From Hypanus sabinus (Eukaryota): a DNA stretch of 64,000 bases. Under the pieces are notes generated by a model, which saw only the letters and a list, made by a program, of their open reading frames with translations, ran no database searches and was not told where the DNA came from. The position numbers and the translations under genes are program-made. Shown here in pieces: positions 1,140 through 61,165 of this stretch. Location: the NCBI RefSeq assembly GCF_030144855.1, contig NC_082727.1:62434001-62498000 (forward strand). Reading direction: 5' to 3'. How positions within the stretch are numbered: the first letter of the stretch is position 1; each line of letters opens with the position of its first letter.

Positions 1140-1605
1140 CCAACATGTCAGTCCGTGGCCTCTTCTTATGCCAAGATGAAGCCACCCTCGGTGGAAGAGC
1201 AACACCTTATATTCTGTCTCTAACCTGATAGCATGAATATCGATCTCTCCTCCCACCCACTCCTCGTTTCTTTTCTTCCCTCACACTGGCCTCTTAACTC
1301 TTCATACTTATTTATCACCTCCTCCTTCCCTTTCTACTATGGTCCACTTTCCTCTCCCATCAGATTCCTTCCTCTCTAGCCCTTTATCTTTCCTATTCAC
1401 CTGGCTTCATTTATCACCTTGTAGCTATCTTCCTTCCCTTCCCCAATCTTTTTATTCTGGTGTCTTCCCCCTTCCTTTCCAGTCCTAAAAAAAGGTTTCA
1501 GCCCAAAATGTTGGCTGGTTATTCATTTTGACCTGCTGAGTTCCTCCAGTGTTGTGTGTGTGTTGCTTTGGATTTCCAGCATCTGCAGAAGTTCTTGTGT
1601 TTAAA
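1140..1605 (+). mobile_element. Penelope-like element 3' fragment (end of GIY-YIG endonuclease, pyrimidine-rich spacer, degenerate hammerhead and tail)
   Basis: CQDEATL..EEQHLIF remnant; tail ctgctgagttcctccag...gatttccagcatctgcaga shared with many copies in the window. Confidence 0.8.
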
Positions 1606-2094
1606 ACTTAGGTCTGCTTCTTTCTACATGGACACTGGATGATCTATCCGAGCATTTCTAATATTTTCTGACCTTTGAATATCTGGAATATGTTTCTCAT
1701 ATCTTCTGTAACACCTGCCAACATTAGATCCCGGGCAAAGCAATATATCAATAAACAATGTGATAAATGTGACAGAGGCAAAAATAATGTAAACAAACAA
1801 AGAGCTCAATGTTGGTATGCTGCCTTTATTTGAAACAATGCATCTGGATTAATCACAAGATCCACCCCCATGACTGATTTCAAGGGCAGTTTCATTTAAT
1901 GTGTGCCAGCCACAATACTTGCATGCAGTAAAAATACTTGAAATGACTACAACATACTTCAAGAAGATCCTTTTCGATTTTTGTGATGACCATAACACTT
2001 TTTCCTTTTTTAAAAAATTGGAATAAGCAGAACAATATTTGGTAATATATAGAAAAAAAAGTTACATATTATTTTCAAATCCTCTGAAAATTCA

Positions 2095-2392
2095 ACAGAG
2101 TCCAGACAGATTCATCAGAATGTTACGTGGAATTAAAAGCAGAAATTGGTATGGCTGGGTTTATTCTCACTGGAACACAGATGTTGAAGGGGTAATGATG
2201 TGCAAAGTTTTGAGAGGCATAGATAGGATAGCTAGTCAGCATCTCTTTCCCATCTAGGGGACACTAGAACTAGAGAACATTGGTTTAAGGTGAGAAGGGA
2301 GAAATTTAAAGAATATCTGACGTGTAAATTTTTCCACCCAGATGGTGATGAATATTTGGAATGAGCTGCTAGTGGAGGTAGATACAATGATT
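2095..2392 (+). mobile_element. CR1 LINE 3' fragment, decayed
   Basis: agagtccagacagattcatcagaatgtt...actagagaacattggtttaaggtgag resembles the CR1 ORF2 end. Confidence 0.65.
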
Positions 2393-3220
2393 AAAATCCC
2401 CTTTCAGTCCTGTACATTTCTGTGATAAATGGAACCCACAGAAAAGTTTATCAGGGATATTCTTAGAGAAGAGGAAACTGAAAACTGCTTCCTAAATTAC
2501 ATTTACTGCGGCTCCTGAGTCCCAGACTATTCAGATCATCAAGTTAGAGGTACTGGTGGTGTAAGTCAGTTTTTATATTTGTTAGAGTTTTGTGGCTATG
2601 CATACTTGTGACTTTTTGTATCAAGGACTACCGCAAGCTTCAGTTCATATATTTGGCAATATTTCTAGTAATTTCCTTTGGAGGGTCTTAGATGTGTGAT
2701 TTTTTGGCTTCTGATTTGTATAACCTCTATCATGGGAATGGCAATTAAGGTGAAAAGAACTATTAAATATCAGGCTGTCAGATCCTGCCGGATTTTTGCA
2801 GTGTTAAGCAACTTGGAATACCTATTTATTCACCCTTTTATTTCTTTAAATCTGATAACTTAATATTTCCTCTTTTGACAGTCGTACGCTTTTGACACCC
2901 AGTTGCTGCACTGTGCATATAATACTGCTTGCCTGTTTAAAGGTTGGGTTTGTCTGTATTCGAGCGCCTTCACTCAATGATCCTTTTTTTTTAAGATCAG
3001 TTAATATTTCTGGTGCTGAAGTAAATGGCAGTGGTGAAATTTTAGCGTGAATGAATAGCTAAAATCAAAAATAAGCATCATCTGTGAGTGCTTCAGGGAT
3101 ATGTTGAACCTTGTATGACAGAATTGAAAATGCCCATCATGGAAGTGTGACTCTATGCTCTTGGGTGTTTGTGGTGCCGCTTGTGGTGACAAAATAAGAA
3201 TAGACAAAAAGTAGATGATT

Positions 3221-3545
3221 ATGTGAAGCACGTTTGGGCCGAAACATTGACGGTACTTTTTTCTATAGATGTTGCCTGGCCTGCTGTGTTCCACCAGCAT
3301 TTTGTGTGTGTCCATTTATTCTTCCTCTCTTGTATCCCCTCTCACTTGTCATATTGTTCCTCACTCTTTATCCCTTGTCTCTTTCATTCAGCTACCTCCC
3401 CTTTACACTCTCAGTGACAATGCAGGGTCTGAGCCAAAAATGTTGATTTTTCTAATGCCTCCACAGATGCTGCCTGATCTGGAGTTCCTCTAGCAATTTG
3501 CCTTTTTTATATAACTCCAAATCCCAGCATCTACAATCTCTTCAT
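3221..3545 (+). mobile_element. Two degenerate Penelope terminal-repeat (hammerhead + tail) copies
   Basis: ggccgaaacattgac...cctgctgtgttccaccagcattttgtgtg and cagggtctgagccaaaaatgttga...gatgctgcctgatctggagttcctc. Confidence 0.7.
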
Positions 3546-3814
3546 TTAAAAGCATGTATTTTCCACTTACTATTTTCCCAGATGTTGCTCATTTTCTTTG
3601 TGTGCACCTAATGCATTACTGTTTTCTTTGTTTTTTAAAATGCAACTTTCTTTTAAATAAATTTAGTTTAGCAGTAACTGTGAAAATACACTGCTTTTCT
3701 ATGACTTTTAGAACGTGCTGATCTTCCATTCATTGGCTGGTACTGTGCTACAGATATTGTAAAGGTACTAGTCCTGGAACACACCTGTGAAGGAAGTTGA
3801 TGAGAGTGAGGCTC

Positions 3815-4281
3815 TCATCAGCCCATTTTAACCAAACTTTACAGGAACATCACTGAGAGTGTCCTCACTACCTGGCACAGGAATTGCAAGGCATCCGACT
3901 GCAGGTCTCTACAAAAGACTGTGAAAACTGCTGAGAAGGTTATCACTGTCTCTCTTCCACCCATTATTGTTATTTATCACGAGCGCTGCATACACAGGCC
4001 TCAGCATTGTCAGCAATCCCTCCCACCAATCCAACAATGTCTTTCATCAGACAAAAATTGTTCAGATGCCACCATCCATGATCATCAATATCATAATACT
4101 ATTTACTTTTTGACTTGTATCATATAAACACCTTATTATTTGTTAATATATTGAGGTAATACTTTATTTGTGTGTTGTATGTGTGAGCTATATGTACTGT
4201 GTTGGTCAAGATGAACTTTGTCTCATTTGGCAGTGTATCTGGGTATGGTTAAATGACAATAAATTTGAACTTGAACTTGAG
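3815..4281 (+). mobile_element. Rex1/Babar-type LINE 3' fragment
   Basis: TESVLTTW...CRSLQKTVKTAEKVI remnant; aataaatttgaacttgaacttga tail. Confidence 0.7.
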
Positions 4282-4431
4282 ATTTACAGCAGTTCATATC
4301 CAAATTATTAAAACAACCAGGAAAGATGCAATCTTTCTTCTAATTTACTCATTCCCCTCTAAATTGTGTTTTGAACACTGGTTGTTACTCCCACAATAGA
4401 GTAATTTTGCAAAAACAGGAAAAAAAAGGAG

Positions 4432-5352
4432 AAACAAGATGGTAGCGTGATGCAGCTTGCAGCGGCCACCCTCGATCTGATATGTTATTTGTTAAGCGGG
4501 GATGCCATGCGCAATCCTAATCTGACGAAAAATGGAGGTGGGAGCACAGAGCACGGAGGAACATCTGGAAGTCTCCAGGAAGGCCCTCTTTGTTGCTGGT
4601 GCTGTTGTGAGGTCCAGGTCTCTGCCGTGAAGAACAGGACCCCAGTCCTCGGTGTCGTGTTGCTGGTGACCGTTGCTGGTGACCGTCTTAATATGCTCGG
4701 CAGAGGATGGTGCTTGGAGAAGCTGTGCTAGAGGGGATGGTCAGAGGCTCGGAGGTTTGACGGACTCGGAGTCTGCGGTGCGGTCAGGTCGCTTTCAGTG
4801 TGTGCTGTGTCTGCGAGGCTGGGTTTGATGGAACTTTCATTGTGTGCTGCGTCTGCGAGGTTGACTCGGGCGGCGCCGTGGAAGTCCATAGCGGGGGTAT
4901 TCCCTTCTGCCGCCAGCGTGAGATGACCAGTCTATCGGGACCCTGAGGACTTGTGAAAACTGTGTGGTGGTTTCTTTCAAACGGATTGTCTTTTAACATC
5001 TTTGGACTATTTTTACCATGCCCATGGTCTGTTTTTTATCAATTATGATATTGTTTGCACTGTTGGAACTATGTGGTTTTGTGCAGGTCTTGTAGCTTTA
5101 GTTTTTGGTCTTGTTTTGTCTGGTAGTTTGGAACTCCTTTCCGGGAACAACACTAAGACAGTATAGCGATATTAATACACAACAGCCTCTCCGGACTCTG
5201 GATTGGGGATTGCCAAAAGTTATGTGGCTTTTCTGGTGTAGTCTGTTTTGTCGTGTGCTTTTGTGATATCATTCTGGAGGAATGTTGTCTCATTTTTTAA
5301 CTGCATTGCATTTGTGGTTTTTGAATGACAATAAACTGAATCTGAATCTGAA
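4432..5352 (+). mobile_element. Non-autonomous LINE-dependent retroposon (GC/CpG-rich body, tandem-repeat tail)
   Basis: Starts caagatggtagcg, has no coding similarity, and ends aataaactgaatctgaatctgaa like the Rex/L2 tails in the window. Confidence 0.6.
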
Positions 5353-5955
5353 AATAAGCATATACTGTATCTTCTGTTTGAGCTAAAGGGAGTGATTTTC
5401 CATTTTCCAAGCAATCTCAGATCAAATATTTCTAATTTTCTCTCTTGCATCAAGCTGCTGTTTCTACACTTTAGCAACTTCTCAATCACCACTCCGAAAG
5501 TAGGAAAAGGATAGATAAAGATTGAGATGGAGCGTTAGCATGATGTGAAAGTGGGACCTTAAAAACAAGAAAAATGTTATAATGGTAGTAAATATGTGAA
5601 TGGGCTTAGGGACAGCGATATAGAACACACTACTCAAAAGTACAAGGTTCTGAAGTTCTTAAGAGTGTGCATGGGTATGGGAAGACTTAGTTGAGTCATT
5701 TGCAGCACCTTGGTATCTGTACTGGTTGCAAATAGGAGATAGAAAAAGGCATACTAATGTTTTGTGAGTTGCCCATCTAAATTGAGTTTGCTTCTCCACA
5801 TTGTTTTAAATCCTGAAAACTAAGATATAAAATGTTTCTGCAGGACTTCTAATTACTACAGCAGTGTGTAATCTCTGTTCTATTTCTTGCACAACTTAAG
5901 AAAATATGTTTGTCTTAGGAACCATAATTAATGTAGGAGCCATAAAATAACTTCC

Positions 5956-6272
5956 TAGTGGCCAAACATTTTAACTCCAATTCCCGTTCTTGTTCTGATG
6001 TATTGGTCCGTGGCCTCCATTTGTGCCAAGATGAGGTCACCGCCAGGGTGGAGGAGCAATGCCTTATATTCCATCTGGGTCACCTTCAATCTTGTTGGAA
6101 TGAATATCGATTTCCCCTTCCAGCAAAAATTCCCTTTCACCCCTCCCCTCCACACTCTGGCCTCTTACCTTGACTGTTTATTCAGTTCCATGGATGCTGC
6201 CTGACCTGCTGAGCTCCTCCAGCATTTTGTGTGTGTTGCCTTGGATTTCCAACATCTGCAGACTTTCTTGTT
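5956..6272 (+). mobile_element. Penelope-like endonuclease C-terminal fragment plus tail (hammerhead core deleted)
   Basis: ORF 5958-6173 reads HFNSNSRSCSDVLVRGLHLCQDEVTARVEEQCLIFHLG; followed by the gatgctgcctgacctgctgagctcctccagca tail. Confidence 0.8.
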
Positions 6273-6347
6273 TCCATAAAATAAAGCTGTGATTGTTAGA
6301 ATATTGCAATAGCGAAGTAGTTAGCACAACGCTATCACAACTTAGGG

Positions 6348-7704
6348 CAGGGTTTCTCAACAAGAGGGCTTCAGGAGTTCCACGAAAAATTGTATTTAGA
6401 AAAACTAGACATCACTTTTTGAACTTTGCTCGATGCATTATGCTAGCGCTCGCAGTGGTGGATAGTGATCGAGTAACCCCGTTAGCAGTCTCTTCAGAAG
6501 TCTCTCAGGCCAGTATGGCAGTGTGCAGTAGGGTTGTGTTTATTTAGTTGAGTCCTCTCCTTCCTGAATTGCCGTCCACAACTTCCCTTTATGTGCCACC
6601 AACTGACTTATGGAAGCAATGAACTTTACCAGTGTAGCAGAAAATTGAAGGGATATTTTCAATTTTTGAAGGAGATGTGTAAGATGGAAGAGGAGGACTC
6701 CAGGCCTTGGCCTATGGACAATTCTGATAGGTTAATGATGAAGAATTACAATCTTCTGAGTCATTTCACTGCACTAGTGCAACAATGGACCCAAAAAAAG
6801 TCCAACTTTATGATGAAAGCTACTGATCAGTAGTTTTTACATGGACTAGTGATCCAAGCTGTCCTATTCCATTGTGCCTAGTCTGTGGCAAGCAACTTAT
6901 AAATGCATTAAGAATCCAGCAAAATTGAAAAGAAACTTAACTACAAATCACAGCCATAAAACATGTAAAAGTTCTGATTATTTTGAATGGATATTGGAAT
7001 TTCAAAACAAACATGGAACTTAGAGGGCTATGTAATTAGCCCTAGTTAATTTCTAAAGTAAGTACATGTTTGGCACAGCATTGTGGGCCAAAGGGCCTGT
7101 ATGTTGCTGTAGGTTTTCTGTGCTTCTGAACAGAGTAAAGCTTTTGTTATCGAAGTCACAGTCAGTAAAAGTTTCAGGAAGCAAGTTATTTAGTAGCAGA
7201 ACATATTACTCAGAAAAGGAAAAGTTTTTGCTGTATTTCAACTTCTTACATGTGGGAGCAAGCTTTTTACTATTTAACAAGCATCAAGGGCAAGGGTAGA
7301 AATTGTCTGATTTCAGTTGAAAGTGAAATCCACATGTGCTTATCTCAAGTTCAACCCAACCCAGAATTAAATCCAGTTACTCAATAACTTAAGCCAGTTA
7401 TTCAACAGAAATTTATTATGTTTGCCTTATGAATTTTTAAAATTTATGAAAAGGAAAGGAAAAGATTAATTTTAAGAAAGATAAGCTAAGCTTAACTACC
7501 TGTTTTTTTTCAAGAAAAGTTGGCAAAAAAATCATTTTCTACTGAAAAGAGCTTTGACGATTATTTTTGTATTATTATATATACAACTTACTGATCACAC
7601 TAACATACTTTGAGCTGTAGATATAATAATTTTTACACAGGGATTCCCTGAGACCTGAAAATTATTTTAAGAGTTCCTCCAGGGCAAAAAGCTGAGAAAG
7701 GCTG
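6348..7704 (+). mobile_element. hAT (Buster/Charlie, ZBED5-like) DNA transposon, internally deleted
   Basis: Imperfect TIRs cagggtttctcaac / gctgagaaaggctg; 8-bp TSD acttaggg (6340-6347) / gcttaggg (7705-7712); BED-finger remnant FTWTSDPSCPIPLCLVCGKQL..PAKLKRNLTTNHSH and a C-terminal dimerisation-domain remnant. Confidence 0.85.
7011..7128 (+). mobile_element. Short CR1 3'-tail insertion inside the hAT element
   Basis: ggcacagcattgtgggccaaagggcctgtatgttgctgtaggttttc; the same tail occurs at about 62300-62428. Confidence 0.65.
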
Positions 7705-8623
7705 GCTTAGGGTGTTGGAGTTTGGAGTTAAATTTCAATGGCATCTGTACGGATCTTATATGTCTTCCCTGTATAATATATGGGTTTTCTCCAGGTGTTC
7801 CAGTTTCCTCCCACAGTCTAATGCTGTATCAGTTAATAGGTTAATTGCTTATTGTAAGTTGTCCCTTGATTGGACTGGGTTAAATTGGGGGTTGCTGGTG
7901 GTGTGGCTCGAACGGCTGGAAGGTCCTGTTCTATGTGGTAACCCAATCAATCAATCAATAAATAAATAAATAACTTGGATAACTAATTTTTTAGTAAGCC
8001 ATTCATAAGAAATTTCCAATGGATTATGACATGCCTTTTTCCAATTATTCTCGGAGAAAGAAGTAATTGGTGTCACCTTTTACTGGTGTGAATAGACAAG
8101 TGAATCAATATACAATAGCTTGTACAAGTGTTTAGAGTAATTATTTATAGTCACTTTTTAGAGTAGCTTCATAGAGATTAAGAGTAGCTATCAAAATGTA
8201 ACAATTCACTCTTTTTATTTTCAAACTTCACATGCACAATCCAGCTGTCTTCTCATTTATCACTGTGTTCAGCTCCATTGCCAAAATTCCTTACTCCAGA
8301 TGTTGAAGACTGAGAGCATCAGGGAAAGAATTTGTTACTTATCTAGTTTGCTTTGTGTTAACAGAAGAAGAAAATCATGAGAAATGCTTCACCCCCACCC
8401 TTACACCCCTTACCATCTTACCCACCCCTTCCTGAGAATTGCCTTTAATGCAACAACATTTATTGAGAATTCAAAGGCAAGTTGGCATTAGTTGGTTTCA
8501 GGGATCACATAGGCTATTAAAGGATAATATAGTGGAGGGATCTGTAGATCTTGTATTTGACCATTGGGCGTCAGGTGGCCAATCAAGACTGATGACAGAA
8601 GACGTTATAATATCTGGTTTATA

Positions 8624-8686
8624 TTCCCAACCTAAAGTCCACAGACTCCTTGGTTAATGGTATGGGTCCAAGGCATAAAACCCCTG
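8624..8686. mobile_element. Tiny hAT-type MITE, degenerate
   Basis: ttcccaacct...ggtccaaggcataaaacccctg; related to 9985-10049 and 17191-17258. Confidence 0.5.
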
Positions 8687-9499
8687 CTCTACTGGGTTTG
8701 CAAAACTCTGTGAATGGCTGGTCTCCCAGTCATCCACTGAAGTTCCCATAAATTATGCATTTTCAGGTTTGTGGTTCAAATATGTCACTTGAACTGTAGC
8801 TGAAATATCCTGATACCCGAGGCAGCAGTCTTTTTCTTCTTAAGCTCGTCAGCCCTTCTGTGGCATAAGCCACCAGCAGCAGCTCAGCAGTCCTCTTTCC
8901 TGAGCCAGTCTTTCAGTATTTCAAGGTGTAGCCAGTCGAAGATCTATCCTCTCCCAGGATTGAGATCTTTGGAGTTTCTCTTGGCATTTCTGTAGGACTA
9001 AGCTTTTTATGGGATGGAGCTTGAAGCCCCATGACCAACCCTCCTCCTTTTGCAGGCAGACTTGAGTCCATCCATGCCAGAGTTTGATGCACAGGCCTCT
9101 AATGGAAAATACTAGTCTGCATTTCATTTATAGGCGTTAGAATTACATTGGTATTTTAATACATTTCTTTTGTCTTGCATGGTATCTGACAGCTTTACAG
9201 TTTTACAAACTATATTTTCTCCAATGACTTTTCAGTACAATGGAGATTCCAAGAAGGGAGATGAAATAACTTGTATTTTTTATTATTTAAATTGCTTACA
9301 ATAAACTGTTTTGTCCCTTGACTGATTTGTGGCTCCACAAAATATTTTACTTGCTGGCATCCTGTTTAGTTGTGATTTGTTGCTGCTTTTTTATATGGAA
9401 TTTCAACTAGTTAAATGCATGTATCTTGCAAAATGTGTCTATAGATGCATAAAACTTGATGTTTGTTGACAGTCTTGTGCATTCACAAGGCACTTTAGA

Positions 9500-15494: not shown

Positions 15495-15630
15495 GAGGTT
15501 ATGCGCTTCGCCCCTGCTTTATTCATTTTATACTTTTGACTGTGAGGGTGAGAACAGCTCCAATACCATATTTAAGTTTGCTGATTGTCCAGCACTGTCA
15601 TTGGCTGAATTAAAGTTGGTGACAAATCCA
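15495..15630 (+). mobile_element. Rex1/Babar RT fragment
   Basis: SPLLYSFYTFDC...NTIFKFAD in ORF 15397-15735. Confidence 0.7.
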
Positions 15631-16835
15631 CCTCTCAGAGTGAGGTTGTTGGGATCATCTGCTGTATCCAATGCTCCCAGTGTGGCCTCTTGTATATCGG
15701 TGAAACCTGATGTAGATTGGAGACTGCTTTTCTGAGCACCTACACTCCGTGTGCTACAAAATGCGTGATCTTCCAGTGGCCACCCATTTTAATTCCACTT
15801 CCTATTCCCATTCTGACATGTTCAAAGGTTCAAAGGTCCAATTTATTGTCAGAGAAATGTAGACAATATACATCCTAAAATGCTTTTTCTTCGCAAACAT
15901 TCATGAAAGCAGAGAAGTGCCCCAAAGAATGAATGACAGTTAAATGTGAGAACCCCAAAGTCCCTCCAGCTCCCCCTCCTTCATGCAACAATCCCCCCTC
16001 ACCCCCCAGCAAAAAAAGTGCACCCGCTACCGAGCACAAGCATGAGCTGGGCGATAGCAAAGACCTTGCAATTACCCCAAAGACGATCGCATTTCACCCA
16101 ACATTCGACAAACCACATGTTCTCTCTCTCCTTAATAAGGGAGAGGGAGGTGTCCCCCATTTTCACAGCAAGCGGGAGACATAATAAACCAATGGTTTAC
16201 GATGTAAAAAAGTCCATTTCGTTGATTTTTTTCAAGCTCTGTGCCTGAAGATCGCAAAGATCTCAGGTCTTCGGGCCCACAGCGAAAGATTTTCTGGTCT
16301 CCCTAACGACACACGAGTCTCCTGCCATGACAGCAACCCTCGATCCACCCGCCTCTGGAGCCCTGAGATCTTAGGTTTTCGAATTCGAGCCGGCCTCTCA
16401 GGCTGAACCCTTGGCATGCCGAACAATGAAGGCCCATCCTGAAACCCTGAGAACGGGTCCCATTCCCACAAAGAACCGAAGACTGCGGGTCAGGGCCTTC
16501 AAAAGAACCCTGAAAGGGAAAAATAAAGATACTGAAGATGGAAATAGAGCAGTTTCCGAAGATGCAAACAAGGGAGTTGCCGTTTAGCGACATGTCAGAC
16601 CAAGGCCTCCTCTACTACCACAATGAGGCCATGCTTAGGTTGGAGGAGCAACACCTTTTATTCCATCTAGGTAGCCCTCAACCTGTTGGCATGAACATCG
16701 ATTTCTCGAACTTCAGGTAATGTCCCCCACCCCCCTTCACCATTCCCTATTCCCATTTCCTTCCCTCACCTTATCTCCTTTCCTGTCCACCAACTCCCTC
16801 TGGTGCTTCTCCCCCAGCAATTTCTTCCATGGCCT
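15631..16835 (+). mobile_element. Penelope-like GIY-YIG endonuclease region, interrupted by an insertion
   Basis: GIICCIQCSQCGLLYIGET..VATHFN before the insertion; GLLYYHNEAMLRLEEQHLLFHLGSPQPVGMNIDFSNFR after it. Confidence 0.85.
15822..16588 (-). mobile_element. Non-autonomous retroposon with 7-bp TSD
   Basis: TSD gacatgt at 15815-15821 and 16589-16595; minus-strand tail aataaattggacctttgaacctttgaa; homologous to about 42833-43986. Confidence 0.8.
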
Positions 16836-17190
16836 TCATGAATCTCAGGTTTGTATATGGTGACATAGATATACTTTGACAATAAATTTGCTTTGAAATT
16901 TGAAAGGCTGCTGTGTGTATGGTTTTAATTTATTTTCCTCCACAGCTCTAATTGTTTATTGTATAAAAAATCGGTGGTATGGGAGCATTGTCGGGTACCT
17001 AATATTGAAACATTTTTCCTACAATAAGAAATATTTATAGCATTATCATTAAGTGATTTAATTATTTTGTAAAAATACTCTTTTAGTGTGAGGTATCTGC
17101 TTTAAAGTGTAGATTAAAAATACTTTGATTAAAAACATTGCAATTTAAACCATTTTGTTCCAATAAATGGAATAGTCGCCCATGCTGATG

Positions 17191-21264: not shown

Positions 21265-21625
21265 AATATTCACAAAATGGAGAAGGAATTCAGCAGGTCA
21301 GACATCATCTACGGAAAGGAATAAAGAGTCAACATTTCATGCTGAGATCATTCGTTATGACTGGAAAGGACAGGGGAAGACTGAGTGTTACTCTGGATTT
21401 GCAGCATTTGCAGAATCTCTTGTTTTCATAAATATTGCTTTGTTTTGCCTATCTCTCCCCCGCTTTGTCTGCTACTGAAACAAGCATGATTTTTTTCCAG
21501 TTCTAACTAAGAGTCTCAAATATGAAACCATAACTGTTTCACTTCCTGCAGATGCTGCTTAACCTGCAGGGTATTTCCACCATTTTAATTTTTTCTTTCA
21601 GATTACCAGCATCTGCAGTTTTTTT
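21265..21625. mobile_element. Penelope terminal-repeat copies (inverted pair at about 21265-21425 plus a forward copy)
   Basis: Minus-strand tail with degenerate hammerhead joined to forward ggatttgcagcatttgcaga; second degenerate copy at about 21490-21625. Confidence 0.6.
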
Positions 21626-23329: not shown

Positions 23330-23703
23330 TAATTGGTGCTTTTCTGTGCGGACAATACTGATTCAGTAAACTGGAGACACAGGAGACTGGAATCTGGAGA
23401 ACATTCTGCTGGAGGAACTCATGCAGGATCCTGACACAGGTTTTTGACTCAAAATGTTGACAATTCCTAACCACTGTTCGACCTCTAAAGTTCCTACAGT
23501 AGTTTATTTGTTAATATTGACACAGTGATGCTGGAAAATTGTGAATGTCACTCTAGTCTTTAACAAGGCAGAGAAGCAAAAGGAAGGAAATTATAGGCCA
23601 GTTAGCCTCATGTCAGTGGTTTGGAAGATTTTTGAGTCCATTGTTAAGGATAAAGTTTCAGGTTACCTGGAAGGACATGATAAATTAGACCAAAGTCAGC
23701 ATG

Positions 23704-24235
23704 CATGAGGAAATCTGCAGATGCTGGAAATTCAAACAACAACACACACAAAATGCTGGTGGAACACAGCAGGCCAGGCAGCATCTATAGGGAGAAGCGC
23801 TGTCGACACTTCGGGCCTTATAACAACACCTTATAAACTGGCTGGGTAGCCTCCAACCTGATGGCATGAACATTGACTTCTCTAACTTCCATTAATGCCC
23901 CTCCTCCCCTTCTTACCCCATCCCTGACATATTTAGTTGTTTGCCTGTTCTCCATCTCCCTCTGGTGCTCTCCCCACCTTTCTTTCTCCTGAGGCCTCCC
24001 GTCCCATGATCCTTTCCCTTCTCCAGCTCTGTATCACTTTTGCCAATCACCTTTCCAGCTCTTAGCTTCATCCCACCCCCTCCGGTCTTCTCCTATCATT
24101 CCGCATTTCCCCCTCCCCCCTCTACTTTCAAATCTCTTACTATCTTTCCTTTCGGTTAGTCCTGACGAAGGGTCCCGGCCCAAAACGTCGACAGGTGCTG
24201 CCTAGCCTGCTGTGTTCCACCGGCATTTTGTGTGT
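23704..24235 (+). mobile_element. Penelope-like insertion with inverted terminal repeat and 14-bp TSD
   Basis: TSD ccaaagtcagcatg at 23690-23703 and 24236-24249; inverted tail 23704-23818, then forward QHLINWLGSLQPDGMNIDFSNFH* with hammerhead and tail. Confidence 0.9.
24159..24192 (+). ncRNA. Minimal type-I hammerhead ribozyme motif (G12>A, predicted inactive)
   Basis: gtc CTGACGA A GGG tcccgg CCC AAAA C GTC gac. Confidence 0.7.
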
Positions 24236-25751: not shown

Positions 25752-26780
25752 AAATAACACACACAAATTGCTGGTGGAACACAGCAGGCTAGGCAGCATC
25801 TATGGGAAGAAGTGCAGTCGACATTTCAGGCCAAGACCCTTCGTCAGGACTAACTGAAAGAAGAGGTAGTAAGAGATTTGAAAGTGGGAGAGGGAGGGGG
25901 AGATCCAAAATGATAGGAGAAGTCCGGAGGGGGTGGGGTGAAGCTGAGAGCCGGAAAGGTGATTGGCGAAAGGGCTGGAGAAGGGAAAGGATCATGGGAC
26001 GGGAGGCCTAGGGAGAAAGAAGGGGGGAGGGGAGCACCAGAGGGAGATGGAGAACAGCAAAGAGTGATGGGCAAAAAGGGAGAAAAAAGGGGGTGAGGGA
26101 ACTAAATATATCAGGGACGGGGTAAGAAGGGGAGGAGGGGCATTAATGGAAGTTAGAGAAGTCAATGTTCATGCCATCAGGTTGGAGGCTACCTAGCCAG
26201 TATATAAGGTGTTGTTCCTCCAACCTGAGTGTGGCTTCATCTTGACAGTAGAGGAGGCCATGGATTGACAGATCAGAATGGGAATGGGACGTGGAATTAA
26301 AATGTGTGGCCACTGGGGGATCCTGCTTTCTCTGGCGGACCGAGCGTAAGTGTTCAGCGAAACGGTTTCCCAGTCTGCATCAGGTCTCACCAATATACAG
26401 AAGGTCGCACCGGGAGCACCAGACACAATATATCACACCAGCCGACTCACAGGTGAAGTGTCGCCTCACCTGGAAGGACAGGCTGGGGCTCTGAATGGTG
26501 GTGAGAGAGGAAGTGTAAGGGCAGGTGTAGCGCTTGTTCCGCTTACAAGGATAAGTGCTGGGAGGAAGATAGGTGGGAAGGGTTGGGGGTGGGCTAGCGA
26601 ATGGACAAGGGAGTTGCGTAGGGAGTGATCCTGTGGAAAGCAGAAAGGGGGGTAGGGAAAGATGTGCTTGGTGGTGGGATCCCATTGGAGGTGGCGGAAG
26701 TTGCGAAGAATTATATGTTGGACCTGGAGGCTAGTGGGGTTGTAGGTGAGGACAACGGGAACCCTATCCCTAGTGGGGTG
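25752..26780 (-). mobile_element. Penelope-like element, 3' 1 kb (Cys-rich linker, GIY-YIG endonuclease, hammerhead, tail)
   Basis: ORF 26380-26685: YPCKRNKRYTCP..HFTCESAGVIYCVWCSRCDLLYIGET; continues VATHFN..EEQHLIYWLGSLQPDGMNIDFSNFH. Confidence 0.92.
25816..25851 (-). ncRNA. Minimal type-I hammerhead ribozyme, catalytic core intact
   Basis: Minus strand: agtc CTGACGA A GGG tcttgg CCT GAAA T GTC gact (stem I agtc/gact, stem II GGG/CCU, GUC cleavage triplet). Confidence 0.75.
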
Positions 26781-28459
26781 ACATCATTTTGTCTTTTATT
26801 TTCATATTTTTATTTTTTTATCTTATTTTAATGTTTGTACTTTTATCCCATTGTAAAGTACTTTGAATTACTTCATCTGTATGAAAAGTGCACTATAATA
26901 ATGTTATTAATTAATATATCAGCCATGATGGGTTGAATGGCCTAATTCTTCTCTTATGTCTTATGATTTTATACTCAGATGCATATTCCTATTAACAGTG
27001 ATGCTAGTCCAATCCCGTCAGTGCTTTATGGTGCAAACTCCTCATTCCTCATATCAATCTAGTGGAAGTTTTATGCCACTGACTGCAAATCTGTGTATCT
27101 TTCCTCAGGTGTGGACAGCAGAACTACAGCTTGTTGACCTTGAGTGTAGTTAACTGAAGTTCTGAAGAATTATAGTAAGACATCCTTAATGTCATACTTA
27201 TATTTTCCTACAAAAAAGGCCAATGTACTCTTTACTTTCCCAATTGTTTGCTATTCCTGTATGTTTTTTACAGTTTATGAATCAGCACCAAATTTTCAGT
27301 TGACGAAGTTCCAAGGAAAGTCAAAGTATTGATGCATAAAACAAGTTTGAAATTTACACAGGTTTTTAGTCAGGTAAGGGACTTCATTCAAATACCACAG
27401 TTTAGAAAAGAGAAGTGTCTATTGAAAATTATAAGTAGAGTTCCACTACAGGATATTACAATATGCAATGTATCTACCAAGCTTTGTATCTCAGCATAAT
27501 TTATTTAATTTTCTTGGAAGAGGCAAATAGAACTGCTATCAGCCTAGAACAGGTGACTGGACCACAATTACAATGAACTAAATCAAATTTATCAAAAACC
27601 TTGTAGTGGTCTTCTATTTCCTTCACTCCTACTGTGTTCTTCATGAAAAATGCCGTAAGTATTGTGGGTGTTTTGGAGCAGCAGTTCTCACTGTAATCCC
27701 TATGTTTTGTAGCATGAATGGAAAGGTACCAGTAAGCCAATATATAATATTACAAGTAACTGGGATGTAGCTCAGAATTCTTTACATTAGCTATATCCCA
27801 TTTTCATAGTATTTGTTGCAATTCTTTACTGAAGAACCTTACAAGTAATCTAGTCTGATGTAAGTGTATTATTGAAACGTGTAAGCTGCTTGGCGCTTGA
27901 ATAGAGAAACCTTGAAGAATCCATCTGTGTGAAAGTATGAGAATGCCCAAAACATTTTCAATTACATTCTATACACTTGTAAATCAGTCAAATGATATTG
28001 AAACTAATTTGTACTTTCCACAGTTGTCATTCTACAATATTACCTCATCTTATTTTCTTTCATTTGTTAGGAACCCCATGCTATCCATGATAATTATTGT
28101 AATGGAAACTTTTACCATATGGGTGTTGCGCAAATTTACACATGCAATTAAGCTTTTGCATTCAACATATTACAGCACACTATAATGAAGCACCTGGTGA
28201 TCACAAAAATATTAAAATGCTTTTTTGATACAAGTAAGACACTGGCTTGAAAGATCACATAAAATCCGCCCATCTGTGCTGTGATTTTCTGTGTTTCTCC
28301 TATATGAACAATACAAGTCTTCTGCTGCTGTTTAATATTAATGGTGAAAATACATGTGAGCAAATGTTTCCCTTTTCTTGTAATGCTGGTAATACAGAAT
28401 CATTAAACTAACACACTTGTGTTTGTAGCAGAGGTCATACCTACTTTCTGTTTATTTAC

Positions 28460-30894: not shown

Positions 30895-31088
30895 ATCAGA
30901 AAAATCTGCAGATGCTGGAAATCCAAGGCAACTTTCACAAAATACTGGAGGAACTCAGCAGGCTAGGCAGCATTTGTGAACATAAATAAACATTGATGTT
31001 TCTGTCCTGATGAAGGGTCTCACCCCGAAACATCGACTGCTTATTCCTATCCTTCGATGTTACCTGGTCCCTATTCATGTGTGTGTGT
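30895..31088. mobile_element. Head-to-head inverted pair of Penelope terminal repeats
   Basis: Minus-strand tail 30895-31002 joined directly to a forward hammerhead and tail from 31003. Confidence 0.8.
31004..31037 (+). ncRNA. Minimal type-I hammerhead ribozyme, core intact (AUC triplet), sense to ATRNL1
   Basis: gtc CTGATGA A GGG tctcac CCC GAAA C ATC gac. Confidence 0.72.
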
Positions 31089-33884: not shown

Positions 33885-34005
33885 CAGTCCTGTCGAAGGG
33901 TTTCAGTCCAAAACGTCGACTGGACTTTTCTCCATAGATGCTGCCTGGCCTGCTGAGTTCCTCCAGCATTTTGTGTGTGTTGCTCGGATTTCCAGCATCT
34001 TGTTT
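33885..34005 (+). mobile_element. Solo Penelope terminal repeat starting exactly at hammerhead stem I (core mutated)
   Basis: cagtc CTGTCGA A GGG tttcag TCC AAAA C GTC gactg (33885-33922), then the structured tail. Confidence 0.8.
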
Positions 34006-37564: not shown

Positions 37565-37895
37565 GCACATGATTCTGCAGTTACTGGAATTCTTGAGCAA
37601 CACACACCAAGTGCTGGAGGAACTGAGCAAGTCTGGATCAGAATCAGAATCAGGTTTAACATCTCTGGCATATGCCATGAAATTTGTTGCTTTGCAGGAC
37701 AATACAACACGTAATAAAAAATATAAATTACAATGAGGTATGTATATATAAAAATAATTAAGTTAATAAGTAGTGCAGAATAGTGCAAACAGTAGTCAGG
37801 CAGCAGCTAAGAAGGGGAATATACAGTTGAATTTTGGGGTTGAAACCTTCATTGGGACTTGCTGAGTTCCTCCAGCATTTTGTGTATGTTGTTTG
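37565..37895. mobile_element. Inverted Penelope terminal-repeat pair with a Rex tail inserted at about 37638-37790
   Basis: Minus-strand tail, atcagaatcagaatcaggtttaac insert, degenerate minus-strand hammerhead, then forward tgctgagttcctccagcattttgtg. Confidence 0.65.
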
Positions 37896-40480: not shown

Positions 40481-41059
40481 AATGGCAAAGTATGGAAGAT
40501 TTTTACTTTTAAGTATAACAAAATAAATTTTGCCCTGGTATCAAGACTGATAAACACCTAAAATAAATTTGTGTAATGATCTGTGAAAATGGTGATAGTG
40601 TAAGAAATTAATAAAAACCACCATTGTATGCTAAAATAAAGGAACTGTGAAAACCTTGAATAGATTAATGGAGCTAGGCTGAAATACAGCAGATGCAAGG
40701 GTTTGTGCCATCTGACCTTCTTAAATCATCTACTTCTGCAGCGTTTTGAAGATTTTTTTGATTATGTCAATGTCATGGCAGTTTAAAAAAATAAGTGTGT
40801 GTGCCAGCATTTGTGAAGCATTGAAAAGTACTGGAAATTCAATGAAGTCCCAAAGCTTGAAGTACTTTGCAACAGCTATTAGTTAAGTGAGTAGTTTTAG
40901 TCATGGCAACACACACAAAATGCTGGAGGAACTTAGCAGGCCAGGCAGCATATATGCAAAAGAGTATAGTCCGGGGGTCGGCAACCCGCGGCTCCGGAGC
41001 CACATGTGGCTCTTTTACGTCTGTGCTGCGGCTCCCTGTTGCTTTGGGAAATAATTGGT

Positions 41060-54620: not shown

Positions 54621-54693
54621 CAGTACTGTGAAAAAGTCTTAGGCACGTATATATATATATTATACAGACACACACACACACACACGCACACAC

Positions 54694-54728
<35 letters not shown>

Positions 54729-54934
54729 CTCCTTTTTATTCTGGCATTGCCTCCCTTTCCTTCTCGTCTTGAAGAAGTGTCTCGCCTGGAACATCGACTC
54801 TTTATTCATTTCCATAGATGCTGCCTGACTTGCTGAGTTTGTCCAGCATTTTGTGTGGATTTGGGTTTCCAGCATTTGCAGGCTTTCTAGTGTTTATATA
54901 TAGCTAGGGTGCCTAAAACTTTTGCACGGTATTA
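54621..54934. mobile_element. Tc1-family mini element (TIR-only MITE) containing a microsatellite and a Penelope tail
   Basis: TIRs cagtactgtgaaaaagtcttaggcac / gtgcctaaaacttttgcacggtatta, related to the TIRs of 31117-32564. Confidence 0.75.
54648..54724. repeat. Compound (TA)n(CA)n(TA)n microsatellite
   Basis: Directly visible. Confidence 0.95.
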
Positions 54935-56964: not shown

Positions 56965-57006
56965 AACAGTCCTGATGAAGGGTCTCGGCCCAAAACATCG
57001 ACTGTT
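56965..57006 (+). ncRNA. Minimal hammerhead motif with 7-bp stem I (G12>A, predicted inactive), followed by Penelope tail
   Basis: aacagtc CTGATGA A GGG tctcgg CCC AAAA C ATC gactgtt. Confidence 0.72.
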
Positions 57007-58465: not shown

Positions 58466-59119
58466 AATTAGACTGCCCAGAAATTTTATATTTTTCCAGG
58501 AAAGGAGCTGGCCACCCCTTTGACATTTTCTCCTAATTTGACAAATAAACTGGCAACTTAATTTCACCACCATTATTTTTCTTACATTTTAAAATAAAGA
58601 TGGATTCTTGGCAGGATCCCTGTGCTGGCTCAAATGAATCTGCTATCTCAATACTACAAGGTGTGAATAGTCACTGAAATCTCTAAATGAATTACCACTG
58701 TCTCAAGCACTCTGGTTCATTTGCTTCCAACTGAATTCTAATCTACACTTTGCAGCTCTACAGTTATGTAAATTTACCTATTACAAGCCAAATTTAACTT
58801 AATAGCTGTGTTTTAAGACATAAATTACACCTAGATCCTCCTCTGGCAGTTAGAATTTGATTTTGTACCAGTTTGACTTGTACTGGCATCCCTAGTCTTG
58901 AAATCTTAGTTTGTGTTCAATGCGTGATAAGAATGAATATTTTTGTCTTTGGCTTATAAACGAAAGGAACTGTGCTGCAATTTATCTTGCACAGTACAAC
59001 ACAAGTGTATTTTACCTGATAACCCAACCATGGCTATGTGAGTGACAGACCTCGGCTTTTCAGTTTGCATTATTGTTTTGTATATGACCACATTTAGAGA
59101 AGCTGACAGACAATACAAA

Positions 59120-59502
59120 CTTACATTCCCATTCTGGTTAGCCTCTCTCACCTGCCCATCACCTACTTCTGGTTCCCCTCTTCCCTCTCTTTCTTCCACA
59201 GTCCACTGTTCTTTCCTGTTAGATTCCTTCTTCTTCTGCCCTTTACCTCTTCCACCTATTCCTTCCCAGATTCTTAACTCATTATCCCCTACCCCTCTCA
59301 CCCACCCACCTTCCCCCTCACCTGGTCTCACCTATCATCTACCAGCTTTCACCCCTTCCCCTTCCCTTTATCTTCTTATTCTGGTTTCAGCTTTCTTCCT
59401 TTCTAGTCCTGACAAAGGGTGTCAGCCCTCAACATCAATTCTTTATTCCTCTTGATAGATGCTGCTTGACTTACTGAATTTCATCAGCATTTTGTGTGTG
59501 GT
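59120..59502 (+). mobile_element. Penelope pyrimidine-rich spacer, degenerate hammerhead and tail
   Basis: agtcctgacaaagggtgtcagccc..gatgctgcttgacttactgaatttcatcagcattttgtgtg. Confidence 0.7.
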
Positions 59503-60149
59503 ATTAAATACAAGGTTCTTTTCCGTAATTCAAATCTGCAGACAGTGTAGAACATTCACTGAACCAGGCATTAACTGCAAAAATACTTAATTAAGTATTA
59601 ATTAAATATAACTCAGTCCTACCTGACCTGCAGGTAAATCATTGGCTGGTTGCCTCAACCCACTTACCAGCACTCTTCCTACCTCAATGGATGAATTGCT
59701 AATGTCTGTTGAATCACTGCTCATGTGTTGATCCACATCTTAGTGTCCTACCCAGACCTCAACTCCCAATTATGTTTGGGACTATCCACCATCCAGCATC
59801 CCAGTTCCTTGAACCTGAATGTCTAAATACCCTCCAGAGGATTGCATATTCATATGCAATCTCTCTGTGCTCATGTAAGTTCCTACCCAAACCCTCTTGC
59901 AATAGTGCTCCAAACTACTCAGCACACAATTACCCAAACTCTTCCACCCTGGCACTGGTGTCTGGTCCAAATCTTCCTTGCCACCCACCAATCAATCTGG
60001 TTCTCTGCCTCCCTGCCGTGACCTGAAGAGCTCCTATTTTCAACACAAAATGGATATGCTTTAGATGTATTGCTAGGAAACGTTTTAGTGCTAGCAGCCC
60101 TGGCAGTAATTGGCATGGATCACTGGTGTAGTTGTCCTTCAGTGGGGCA

Positions 60150-60592
60150 CTATTGAGCACATCTACATGAAGTAGCATCCATCATCAGGGACCCCCACCA
60201 CCCAGAACATGCTCTGTCCTTGCTAGTTCCATCAGGAAGAAGGTACAGGAACCTCAATTCTCACATCAGGAACAGTTATTACCTCTCAACCATCGGGCTG
60301 TCACTTTACTCAACTTCACTTGCTCAATCATTGAAATGTTTGCACAATCAAAGGACTCACTTTCAAGTACACTTCATCTCATGTTCTCATTACTTATTGT
60401 TATCTGCTTTTGCAGAGTTTGTTGTCTTCCGCAGTCTAGTTGAATGCCCTAACTGGGCGGTCTTCCATTGATACGCTTGAAGTTACTATTCTATAGATTT
60501 GTTGAGTATGTCCACAAGAAAATGAATCTCAGGGTTGTATATGGTGAGGTATATGTGCTTTGATAATAAATTTACTTTTGAATTTTGAACTT
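60150..60592 (+). mobile_element. Rex1/Babar LINE 3' end
   Basis: IIRDPHHPEHALSLLVPSGRRYRNL; aataaatttacttttgaattttgaac tail. Confidence 0.8.
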
Positions 60593-61069
60593 GACTTTTC
60601 CAGGCACTGAAAATGTTTAATCCAGCTGATGACAAAAAGTAAATTTTGTAACCTCACTTTTCCAAGGAACCACTGCCGTATTTTAGCAGTGATGCTTGTT
60701 TATCATATATGATGTAGAATCAGTTATGTTGATGGGTTTTGACTCTGATGTCATAGAAGGGGTGATTTGGTCAATATAGCTTTCTGCGAGCTTCAGTCAT
60801 TTAACCTGGGGTGTTTTTGAACTGCTGTTGCACCTTCCCATTGGACTTTGTTGAACAGCTGTCAAAAAAAAAATCCTTGGCTGTGATTAAACTGAATCTG
60901 GCACATTGAAGAGGAAAGCTGGTGGCACTGTGATGTGAATACTAATTATTAGTGAGATACTCCACTGTTAGAGAGCCAATGGAGGCCACCTTGTGGTGGA
61001 TCCGGTTGGCACTCTCAGCTGCTCAGGACAGAATGTTGGAGTGGAACAGTTTGGAAATAAAGGAGGTTC

Positions 61070-61165
61070 GTAACACATCAAAATGCTGGAGGAACTCAGC
61101 AAGTCAGACAGTATCTATGGAAGGGAATAAACAACTGACATTTCAGGCTGAGACCCTTGATCAGC
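61070..61165 (-). mobile_element. Penelope terminal repeat with hammerhead (G8>C)
   Basis: Minus strand: CTGATCA A GGG tctcag CCT GAAA T GTC, then the tail. Confidence 0.7.

What the first reader, a model, noticed from the sequence alone, without database searches (positions are those of the whole stretch)
1480..61165. Dispersed family of minimal, loop-less hammerhead ribozymes in Penelope terminal repeats within ATRNL1 introns
Seen: about 18 copies by manual count (clearest 24159+, 25816-, 31004+, 33885+, 56965+, 61132-; more degenerate or partial near 1480, 3225, 3415, 21320, 21500, 23430, 23800, 30995, 37825, 42580, 54766, 59405). Consensus is CAGTC-CTGAYGA-A-GGG-N6-CCC-GAAA-C-GTC-GACTG: stem I (CAGTC/GACTG), the CUGANGA box with one extra A, a 3-bp stem II, GAAA, and a GUC cleavage triplet. 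Stem III is reduced to the palindrome ACGU with no loop. Known: Penelope-like elements carry minimal type-I hammerheads that can cleave as dimers. Inference: this is a high-copy, probably obligate-dimer ribozyme family in this genome, and many copies have no coding sequence left.
Basis: partly seen in the sequence, partly recalled or inferred. Interest (0 to 1): 0.85.

Follow-up and report, generated by a model that had tools for sequence, protein, structure and literature searches.

The report
Decayed Penelope-element hammerhead ribozyme relics
The window is littered with broken 3' ends of a Penelope-like retrotransposon whose ancestral sequence carried the already described minimal, dimer-type hammerhead ribozyme. 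Every copy here is mutated, so this is an ordinary repeat family and not a set of working ribozymes.

Summary
A repeat of about 97 nt, or about 135 nt with an optional extension, occurs 21 times in the 64 kb. Fourteen copies keep the 38-nt hammerhead segment, three keep only its 3' half, and four have lost it.

The consensus is a textbook Penelope-type minimal type-I hammerhead: helix I, CUGAYGA, one extra A, a 3-4 bp helix II, GAAA, a loopless ACGU helix III, and a GUC cleavage site.

The Penelope link is shown directly. Copy 25815-25852(-) lies about 295 nt downstream of the stop codon of a frameshifted GIY-YIG endonuclease remnant. That remnant aligns collinearly with the C-terminal third of an RT + GIY-YIG protein. 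The window also shows 5' truncation, head-to-head inverted partners and the optional 35-40 nt "tail", all known hallmarks of these elements.

The copies are relics:
- None keeps both the catalytic core and the ACGU palindrome.
- The hammerhead segment is less conserved than the adjacent 3' module (79% against 87%), because of CpG decay.
- There is no covariation among the copies.

Minimal dimeric hammerheads in these elements were described in 2014 and 2016-17. This scan has also flagged the same family in at least eight other windows of this genome, apparently a stingray. At most this is a new member of a known kind, and interest is low. The host gene name ATRNL1 was not checked.

The parts
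56967..57004 (+). Hammerhead segment and best match to the consensus. G12 is mutated to A (CpG to CpA) and helix III reads ACAU.
   Evidence: 53.1 bits
25815..25852 (-). Best preserved hammerhead segment. All 11 invariant core bases are kept. Pair 10.1-11.1 is weakened to G-U, and helix III reads AUGU, giving two G-U wobbles in a homodimer.
31002..31039 (+). Hammerhead segment with the core intact. Helix III reads ACAU, which gives C-A mismatches in a homodimer. Helix I has a U-U mismatch. The segment abuts an inverted truncated copy at 30933-31007(-).
33885..33922 (+). Hammerhead segment with A6 changed to U and G12 changed to A. The copy begins at the 5' edge of the hammerhead. A 7-nt GAGACAT repeat flanks the insertion and is a possible target-site duplication.
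24157..24194 (+). Hammerhead segment with G12 changed to A. It is part of a 459-nt 5'-truncated element copy at 23777-24235.
61132..61169 (-). Hammerhead segment with G8 changed to C, which breaks the C3-G8 pair.
1480..1517 (+). Degenerate hammerhead segment with 3 core defects. It is part of a 422-nt copy at 1141-1562 that reaches the end of the endonuclease reading frame.
3412..3449 (+). Degenerate hammerhead segment with 5 core defects.
21326..21363 (-). Degenerate hammerhead segment with 2 core defects. It lies head-to-head with the copy at 21498(+), 137 bp away.
21498..21536 (+). Degenerate hammerhead segment with 3 core defects.
23426..23463 (+). Degenerate hammerhead segment with 3 core defects. 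An inverted truncated copy lies directly upstream.
37824..37860 (-). Degenerate hammerhead segment with 3 core defects. It abuts an inverted truncated copy at 37856-37888(+).
54764..54800 (+). Degenerate hammerhead segment with 2 core defects. It lies beside a (TA)n/(TG)n microsatellite.
59404..59441 (+). Degenerate hammerhead segment with 3 core defects.
3234..3310 (+). 5'-truncated copy that keeps only the 3' half of the hammerhead, from model position 18.
23743..23817 (-). 5'-truncated inverted copy, from model position 20. It lies head-to-head with the copy at 23777/23822-24235(+).
30933..31007 (-). 5'-truncated inverted copy, from model position 20. It lies head-to-head with the copy at 31002(+).
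6167..6235 (+). 3' module without a hammerhead. Together with 5949-6148 it forms a copy whose internal deletion removed the hammerhead.
37601..37646 (-). 3' module only, with no hammerhead.
40910..40971 (-). 3' module only, with no hammerhead.
26146..26783 (-). Frameshifted remnant of the Penelope-like element reading frame, comprising the RT-EN linker, a CX4(C>R)X2C zinc knuckle and the GIY-YIG endonuclease. The stop codon lies at about 26146, roughly 295 nt upstream of the hammerhead at 25852.
25757..26800 (-). Longest element copy in the window. It runs reading-frame end, then 3' UTR, then hammerhead, then 3' module, and ends at GTGTGTGT.
1563..1602 (+). Example of the optional tail extension of about 40 nt after the GTGTGTG end. 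About 9 of 19 copies with a 3' end have it.
15629..15851 (+). Endonuclease-coding fragment of the same element family, without the hammerhead part.
16588..16836 (+). Fragment of the same family covering the reading-frame end and the proximal 3' UTR, without the hammerhead part.

Best explanation
These are dead, mostly 5'-truncated insertions of the 3' terminal region (pseudo-LTR region) of an endonuclease-bearing Penelope-like retrotransposon. Its RT-EN linker has the Neptune/Nematis type of zinc knuckle. The host appears to be a stingray.

The ancestral element ran as follows. The reading frame ended, about 295 nt of CT-rich 3' UTR followed, then a 38-nt minimal type-I hammerhead, then a 3' module of about 60 nt ending in UUUUGUGUGUG. 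An optional extension of about 40 nt could follow.

Inference from the architecture and from published work on other such elements: in transcripts of active, tandemly arranged source elements, two hammerhead copies pair through the ACGU palindrome and through intermolecular helix I. Probably helped by the element's own protein, they cut after GUC and so process the element RNA. Reverse transcription starts at one of two similar sites downstream of the hammerhead. That would explain the two classes of 3' end. Frequent 5' truncation and an inverted second copy would produce the short and head-to-head copies seen.

Shown here: after insertion the copies evolved neutrally. Their four CpG sites decayed, which destroyed G12 and the helix III palindrome in most copies. 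The insertions in this window are therefore not expected to cleave and show no sign of any host function.
For: Family and consensus.

Penelope link:
- Three minus-strand reading-frame pieces at 26146-26783 align collinearly to residues 403-462, 472-530 and 533-606 of the 609-aa protein P0106.
- P0106 carries RVT_1 and GIY-YIG domains.
- A search with the 78-aa piece gave 543 homologues. The best hits with source names are from stingrays and a skate.
- Two further copies, 1141-1562 and 23777-24235, also run from the reading-frame end through the hammerhead.

Known hallmarks of these elements seen here:
- Variable 5' truncation.
- Head-to-head inverted truncated partners at 23817/23822, 31007/31004, 37859/37856 and 21362/21499.
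- An optional 35-40 nt tail in about 9 of 19 copies. These features are described in PMC8557442 and PMC11167929.

All motif features listed by Cervera & De la Pena (PMC4209133) are present in the consensus. They are the extra base between positions 9 and 10.1, the G10.1-C11.1 pair, a palindromic 15.2-16.2, and no helix III loop.

An unrelated element on contig L001 has its own minimal hammerhead about 390 nt downstream of its stop codon. It has a different helix II (GUGC/GCAC) and an AAUU palindrome. The motif is therefore kept, with compensating changes, across element lineages.

Decay:
- 0 of 14 copies are intact.
- Identity to the consensus is 79% for the hammerhead against 87% for the 3' module, p = 7e-4. 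At non-CpG sites it is 85% against 87%, p = 0.41.
- Changes at CpG columns are mostly C to T or G to A.
- Covariation is no higher than in shuffles.
Against: - No full-length element and no RT domain lies in the window. Clade assignment rests only on the linker motif and on homology of the endonuclease end.
- No cleavage data exist for this family. Published metazoan minimal hammerheads cleave poorly in vitro even as dimers (PMC4209133). The one Penelope-like element hammerhead tested with its protein was dispensable for insertion in vitro (PMC11167929).
- The nearest-neighbour energy model prefers a non-hammerhead extended duplex (-33.7 kcal/mol) to the double-hammerhead fold (-19.9 kcal/mol) for the consensus dimer.
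- At least two copies (33885, 56967) begin exactly at the 5' edge of the hammerhead, and two more alignments (31003, 61171) end there. Simple random truncation does not predict this.
Confidence: 0.9

Rival explanations
1. The short copies are a separate non-autonomous element. It would be a SINE-like or non-LTR retrozyme monomer of about 100-140 nt that begins at the hammerhead and borrows the Penelope-like element's 3' module for mobilisation. On this view they are not truncated autonomous elements.
For: At least two copies (33885, 56967) begin within 1-2 nt of the 5' edge of the hammerhead, and two more alignments (31003, 61171) end there. One of them has a possible 7-nt target-site duplication. 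A 2026 preprint derives animal retrozymes from pseudo-LTRs of these elements and reports many monomers.
Against: The 5' ends are spread over positions 1, 526, 542, 872, 928-950 and 966-990 of the reference copy, as expected for truncation. Three copies are contiguous with the endonuclease reading frame. No tandem hammerhead arrays occur in the window; same-strand copies are 0.7-2.9 kb apart with unrelated sequence between them. The CT-rich sequence upstream of the motif aligns poorly, so some of the apparent starts at the hammerhead edge are alignment limits.
Confidence: 0.08
2. Some of the intronic copies have been taken over by the host. They would cut or regulate the host pre-mRNA, possibly as heterodimers between decayed copies.
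For: Two copies keep all invariant core bases. The AUGU and ACAU variants of helix III are complementary to each other (sequence). The family is very abundant in RNA-library contigs.
Against: There is no excess conservation of the core or stems over the flanks, and no covariation. The copies lie on both strands, 10 plus and 4 minus. The two core-intact copies are on opposite strands, so one transcript cannot carry both. The RNA-library contigs give no information on RNA ends, and the tool itself warns that such libraries can hold DNA.
Confidence: 0.02
3. The hammerhead-like consensus is a chance resemblance in a repeat and was never a ribozyme.
For: Rfam hammerhead models do not match. The thermodynamic model does not favour the hammerhead dimer fold. 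No biochemical data exist for this family.
Against: The consensus carries all 11 invariant core bases in the right order and spacing. It also has helix I, helix II with G10.1-C11.1, the typical extra base, and a palindromic 15.2-16.2. It sits in the same place, downstream of the RT-EN reading frame, as in other Penelope-like elements (PMC4209133). A distant element (L001) keeps the motif with different helix sequences.
Confidence: 0.02

Closest known systems
Minimal hammerhead ribozymes (min-HHR) of metazoan Penelope-like elements (Cervera & De la Pena 2014, PMC4209133; Lunse, Weinberg & Breaker 2016/17, cited in PMC6765202)
   Same: Type I topology. No helix III hairpin, only a palindromic 15.1-16.1 tetranucleotide. 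One unpaired base between A9 and G10.1. A G10.1-C11.1 pair. A short helix I of 4-5 bp. Location in the terminal repeat region downstream of the RT-EN reading frame. Most copies are single and sit on truncated elements, and some pairs lie on opposite strands 100-700 bp apart.
   Different: Helix II is only 3-4 bp with a 4-6 nt loop. The 2014 paper describes a helix II of 6-8 bp in the Schistosoma and Drosophila virilis motifs. The consensus has four CpGs, so it decays fast in a methylated vertebrate genome. The papers I could read do not describe this specific ray family.
Poseidon element PAc of Anolis carolinensis (Frangieh et al. 2024, PMC11167929)
   Same: A hammerhead lies a short distance upstream of the site where reverse transcription starts. 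There are two alternative genomic 3' ends 30-40 nt apart (the 'tail'). Here the ends lie about 64 and about 104 nt after the cleavage site. In PAc the RT start sites lie about 85-92 nt after it, by my arithmetic from the paper's coordinates.
   Different: The PAc hammerhead overlaps the start codon, and its cleavage needed the element's protein. Neither point could be tested here. The clade also differs: the linker here is of the Neptune/Nematis type, not Poseidon.
Animal non-LTR retrozymes (Cervera & De la Pena 2020, PMC7229834; Li, Clavereau & Pollet 2026 preprint)
   Same: Non-coding repeats that carry a type I hammerhead and are related to the pseudo-LTRs of Penelope-like elements.
   Different: Retrozymes are tandem arrays of roughly 170-400 bp units with canonical hammerheads that give circular RNAs. 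Here the copies are dispersed and single, the motif is minimal, and no tandem arrays were found.
Double-hammerhead of newt satellite 2 and some viroids (Forster et al. 1988, cited in PMC4209133 and PMC6765202)
   Same: Helix III is too short to be stable in one molecule, so two copies pair to build an extended helix III.
   Different: The newt and viroid motifs still have a 1-2 bp helix III with a small loop, and they have tertiary loop-loop contacts. This motif has neither.

Membership tests
Hammerhead ribozyme, minimal type I (min-HHR) | Invariant core C3 U4 G5 A6 N7 G8 A9 ... G12 A13 A14 A15.1 ... U16.1 H17 in the right order | tested here: met
   Met in the family consensus. Among individual copies only 25815-25852(-) and 31002-31039(+) keep all 11 bases.
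Hammerhead ribozyme, minimal type I (min-HHR) | Helix I and helix II flank the core, with a G10.1-C11.1 closing pair | tested here: met
   The consensus has a helix I of 5 bp and a helix II of 3 G-C pairs plus a U-G pair. In total 78% of cells are paired across the copies, against 21-39% when the partners are slid.
Hammerhead ribozyme, minimal type I (min-HHR) | Palindromic 15.1-15.2-16.2-16.1, so that two copies can build helix III | tested here: met
   The consensus reads ACGU. Only 2 of 14 copies keep C-G at 15.2/16.2, and both of those have lost G12.
Hammerhead ribozyme, minimal type I (min-HHR) | Compensatory changes that keep the helices | tested here: not met
   Among the window copies, covariation is no higher than in shuffles. 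Between element lineages, the L001 motif has different helix II and helix III sequences that still pair. That is a single comparison.
Hammerhead ribozyme, minimal type I (min-HHR) | Site-specific self-cleavage 3' of H17 | not testable with these tools
   The RNA data available are assembled contigs, which carry no end information.
Rfam hammerhead families (types I, II, III, HH9, HH10) | Score at or above the family's gathering threshold | tested here: not met
   No hammerhead match at the gathering score or at E <= 10. I attribute this, untested, to the motif lacking the helix III hairpin.
Penelope-like element, EN+ (canonical) | A single reading frame with a reverse transcriptase followed by a C-terminal GIY-YIG endonuclease | tested here: inconclusive
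   The window holds only the linker and endonuclease end, frameshifted. Pfam does not score the pieces themselves. They align collinearly to the last 207 residues of a protein with RVT_1 and GIY-YIG domains. No RT of this element lies in the window.
Penelope-like element, EN+ (canonical) | Heavy 5' truncation with an inverted truncated copy at the 5' end (pseudo-LTR or inverted structures) | tested here: met
Penelope-like element, EN+ (canonical) | An optional 30-40 bp tail at an end of the insertion | tested here: met
   About 9 of 19 copies with a 3' end carry an extension of about 40 nt after the GTGTGTG end.
Neptune/Nematis clades of Penelope-like elements | [quoted passage not shown] | tested here: inconclusive
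   The homologue P0106 has C-GRSR-C-LT-C. The window copy has C-KRNK-R-YT-C, with the middle cysteine mutated. No phylogeny was made.
Animal non-LTR retrozyme | Tandem head-to-tail arrays of hammerhead-bearing units | tested here: not met
   No two hammerhead copies are in tandem. Same-strand neighbours are 0.7-2.9 kb apart with unrelated sequence between them.

The most novel reading that the evidence does not exclude
CpG decay turns the ACGU helix III into AUGU or ACAU, and these two forms are complementary to each other. In a genome that may hold very many intronic copies, decayed copies that keep the core could still pair in trans as heterodimeric hammerheads. They could then cause low-level cleavage of host pre-mRNAs, so the family would be a diffuse RNA-destabilising load and not an inert fossil.
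Probability: 0.03. Interest if true: 0.55.

Novelty: new member of a known kind. Interest (0 to 1): 0.15.

Why it matters
It matters little beyond annotation. The result shows that a dense repeat in this ray genome is the hammerhead-bearing 3' end of a Penelope-like element, and that repeat maskers and ribozyme scans should treat these sites as decayed relics. Three modest points are useful:
- The family has a very short helix II for an element hammerhead.
- The two 3'-end classes mirror the two reverse-transcription start sites shown biochemically for an Anolis element.
- The CpG-rich core explains why strict descriptor searches would badly undercount such motifs in methylated vertebrate genomes.

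Tried and rejected
- Rfam at the gathering score and at E <= 10 gave no hammerhead hit. The only hits were spurious microRNA-like matches on a microsatellite.
- Pfam on the endonuclease pieces from the window gave nothing, because the domain is split by a frameshift. A library-wide phmmer search followed by Pfam on the hits solved this.
- Several top protein hits are host gene models with an exonised element fragment (a GPCR, RecQ5, NYAP, 'mucin-2'). I did not use them as evidence of architecture.
- The stingray contig carrying the closest homologue could not be fetched because the file was too large.
- The covariance-model scan added no copies beyond the nhmmer set.
- Cofolding the consensus dimer does not favour the hammerhead fold. 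I treat that as uninformative about catalysis, because nearest-neighbour models ignore the tertiary core.
- RNA-library contigs show abundance but no RNA ends, so cleavage could not be examined.
- The 2016/17 Lunse et al. paper and the 2014 supplements are not held in the library.
- The host gene identity (ATRNL1) and the orientation of the copies relative to it were not checked. No reference sequence was at hand, and the point does not change the verdict.
- I considered that the same-strand copies at 54764, 56967 and 59404, spaced 2.2-2.4 kb apart, might be a tandem element array. I rejected this because the sequence between them has no homology to the element.

Full report
**1. What is in the sequence**

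A strict pattern for the core (CTGAYGA, 13 bases, GAAAC, one mismatch allowed) finds four sites, where shuffled sequence gives 0.64.

Self-comparison shows that the hammerhead is only the first 37 nt or so of a longer repeat. An iterated nhmmer profile finds 21 copies of a unit of about 97 nt, with E-values from 4e-7 to 5e-29.
- Fourteen copies include the whole hammerhead segment.
- Three start inside it: 3234+, 23817-, 31007-.
- Four have only the 3' module: 6167+, 37646-, 37856+, 40971-.

These are shown. A covariance model built from the 14 segments with helices I and II recovers exactly those 14 at 32-53 bits. That is by construction. The next best match in the window is noise at 12.6 bits, E = 1.6. 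Rfam's hammerhead families match nothing, even at E <= 10. I attribute that, without testing it, to the motif having no helix III hairpin.

**2. The motif**

The consensus reads, in order:
- helix I 5' strand (C)AGUC;
- C3-A9 as CUGAYGA;
- one extra A;
- helix II, GGGU paired with GCCC around a 4-nt loop;
- G12-A14 and A15.1 as GAAA;
- C15.2, G16.2, U16.1 and C17;
- helix I 3' strand GACUG.

Helix III is the bare palindrome ACGU. One molecule cannot close it. Two molecules can, and helix I then also forms between molecules. This follows from the strand topology and is reproduced in the target structure.

**3. It is the 3' end of a Penelope-like element**

On the minus strand, upstream of the copy at 25815-25852, three stop-free pieces at 26590-26783, 26383-26565 and 26146-26379 read as RT-EN linker, zinc knuckle and GIY-YIG endonuclease. 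Pfam does not score the split pieces.

A search of 1.8 billion representative proteins with the last piece gives 543 hits. Among the longer hits, P0106 and P0054 carry RVT_1 plus GIY-YIG. The three window pieces align collinearly to P0106 residues 403-462, 472-530 and 533-606 of 609. The reading frame stops at about 26146, and the hammerhead starts about 295 nt further on.

Using that 1-kb copy as a query, two more copies (1141-1562 and 23777-24235) also run from the reading-frame end through the hammerhead. One copy (5949-6148 plus 6182-6235) has lost the hammerhead by internal deletion. Two fragments (15629-15851 and 16588-16836) cover only the coding part or the proximal UTR.

The 5' ends are scattered across the reference copy. 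Several copies have an inverted, truncated partner directly at their 5' end, at 23817/23822, 31007/31004 and 37859/37856. The pair 21362/21499 is 137 bp apart.

About 9 of the 19 copies that have a 3' end stop after a further 40 nt or so, instead of after UUUUGUGUGUG. Both kinds of end follow a similar UCCAGCAU...UGUGU motif.

All of this matches the published description of these elements:
- heavy 5' truncation, inverted truncated copies, and an optional 30-40 bp tail (PMC8557442);
- two adjacent internal start sites for reverse transcription, which explain the tail (PMC11167929).

The linker motif CX4CX2C in P0106, with the middle cysteine mutated in the window copy, is the extra zinc-finger-like motif of the Neptune and Nematis clades (PMC8557442). 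I made no tree.

**4. Are the copies working ribozymes? No.**

Against the consensus, none of the 14 copies keeps both the 11 invariant core bases and the ACGU palindrome.
- The three closest copies (56967, 33885, 24157) have all lost G12 through CpG-to-CpA change.
- Copy 61132(-) has G8 changed to C.
- Copies 25815(-) and 31002(+) keep the core, but their helix III reads AUGU and ACAU.

The hammerhead contains four CpGs, and changes at those columns are mostly C to T or G to A. Identity to the consensus is 79% in the hammerhead against 87% in the 3' module (Fisher p = 7e-4). With CpG columns removed the figures are 85% against 87% (p = 0.41). The core alone is 87%.

Pair counting shows 78% of cells paired, far above the slid controls, but covariation is no higher than in shuffles. 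So the motif was inherited from a structured ancestor and has since drifted.

**5. Was the ancestral motif a real hammerhead?**

Several lines say yes:
- All invariant bases are present.
- The extra base between positions 9 and 10.1, the G10.1-C11.1 pair and the palindromic 15.2-16.2 are exactly the unsearched-for features that Cervera and De la Pena list as arguing against chance (PMC4209133).
- The motif sits downstream of the RT-EN reading frame.
- The distant element on contig L001, whose endonuclease end is 39-43% identical to the window's, has its own minimal hammerhead about 390 nt after its stop codon. It reads CUGAAGA, an extra A, GUGC/GCAC, GAAA, with an AAUU palindrome. The helices differ in sequence but still pair.

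Two cautions apply. The nearest-neighbour model prefers an extended non-hammerhead duplex for the consensus dimer, at -33.7 against -19.9 kcal/mol. Published metazoan minimal hammerheads cleave poorly in vitro (PMC4209133), and the Anolis one needed the element's protein and was dispensable for insertion in vitro (PMC11167929).

**6. Abundance and host**

The best named relatives of the endonuclease piece come from the stingrays Hypanus sabinus, Hemitrygon akajei and Mobula hypostoma, and from the skate Rhinoraja longicauda. Earlier notes of this scan call the genome a stingray.

RNA-library assemblies from four runs under four different organism labels each hold 2,241-13,412 contigs at least 85% identical to the stretch 25700-26800. 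This shows that the family is very abundant and shared among related species. It says nothing about cleavage, and such libraries can contain DNA.

The same family had already been flagged by first readers in at least eight other windows of this genome.

**7. Comparison with what is known, and verdict**

Minimal, loopless, dimer-type hammerheads in terminal repeats of Penelope-like elements were described in 2014. Thousands of mostly solitary copies were reported in the coelacanth and Xenopus, and similar motifs in fishes and reptiles (PMC4209133). A review cites the 2016/17 Lunse et al. paper for cleavage as dimers (PMC6765202). A 2026 preprint samples one cartilaginous fish for Penelope-like elements and retrozymes and reports retrozymes in it.

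What is specific to this family is modest: a very short helix II, a CpG-rich core that decays quickly, and a ray host. I file it as a new member of a known kind, of low interest. The ATRNL1 label was not tested.

Noticed in passing
window columns 67-86 of the repeat unit, e.g. 33951-33970, 25767-25786(-): The 3' module has a small hairpin with stem UGCUG/CAGCA. Two subfamilies differ by a paired change just inside it: A..U in 13 copies and U..A in 4 copies (3234, 23817-, 24158, 25851-). Two decayed copies (21499, 59405) carry other combinations. This is one possible compensatory event in what may be the reverse-transcriptase recognition hairpin. Another first-stage note (s1-216756) covers it.
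   Followed up: partly
window 1563-1602, 6236-6275, 23703-23742(-), 30893-30932(-), 54858-54890: The optional extension of about 40 nt repeats the UCCAGCAU...UGUGU motif that precedes the short 3' end. The two classes of 3' end therefore look like two similar start sites for reverse transcription, as shown biochemically for the Anolis Poseidon element.
   Followed up: partly
window 12914-13750(-), 62338-62911(+), 23529-23705(+): These are fragments of non-LTR (LINE-type) reverse transcriptases matching RVT_1, unrelated to the Penelope-like family.
   Followed up: partly
window 54638-54723: A (TA)n/(TG)n microsatellite gives spurious sub-threshold Rfam microRNA matches (mir-297, mir-568, mir-3149). 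A Penelope-like copy starts directly beside it, which fits the reported microsatellite insertion bias of these elements.
   Followed up: no
window 34345-34433: An inverted repeat of about 90 nt forms a long perfect-looking hairpin and gives a sub-threshold match to a plant microRNA family. It is probably a small fold-back or MITE-like element.
   Followed up: no
repeat unit columns 55 onward, e.g. 6190-6290: An ATG 23 nt after the cleavage site opens a stop-free frame that runs through the 3' module and the tail. In the Anolis element the reading frame starts inside the hammerhead, so this could be the element's start codon in a tandem unit. No full-length copy was available to test the idea.
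   Followed up: no
P0001, P0004, P0012, P0017, P0030 (public gene models from rays): Several annotated host proteins of rays (for example 'mucin-2', RecQ5 isoforms and a neuromedin-U receptor) end in, or contain, a fragment of this element's endonuclease. These look like exonised or mis-annotated repeat fragments.
   Followed up: no
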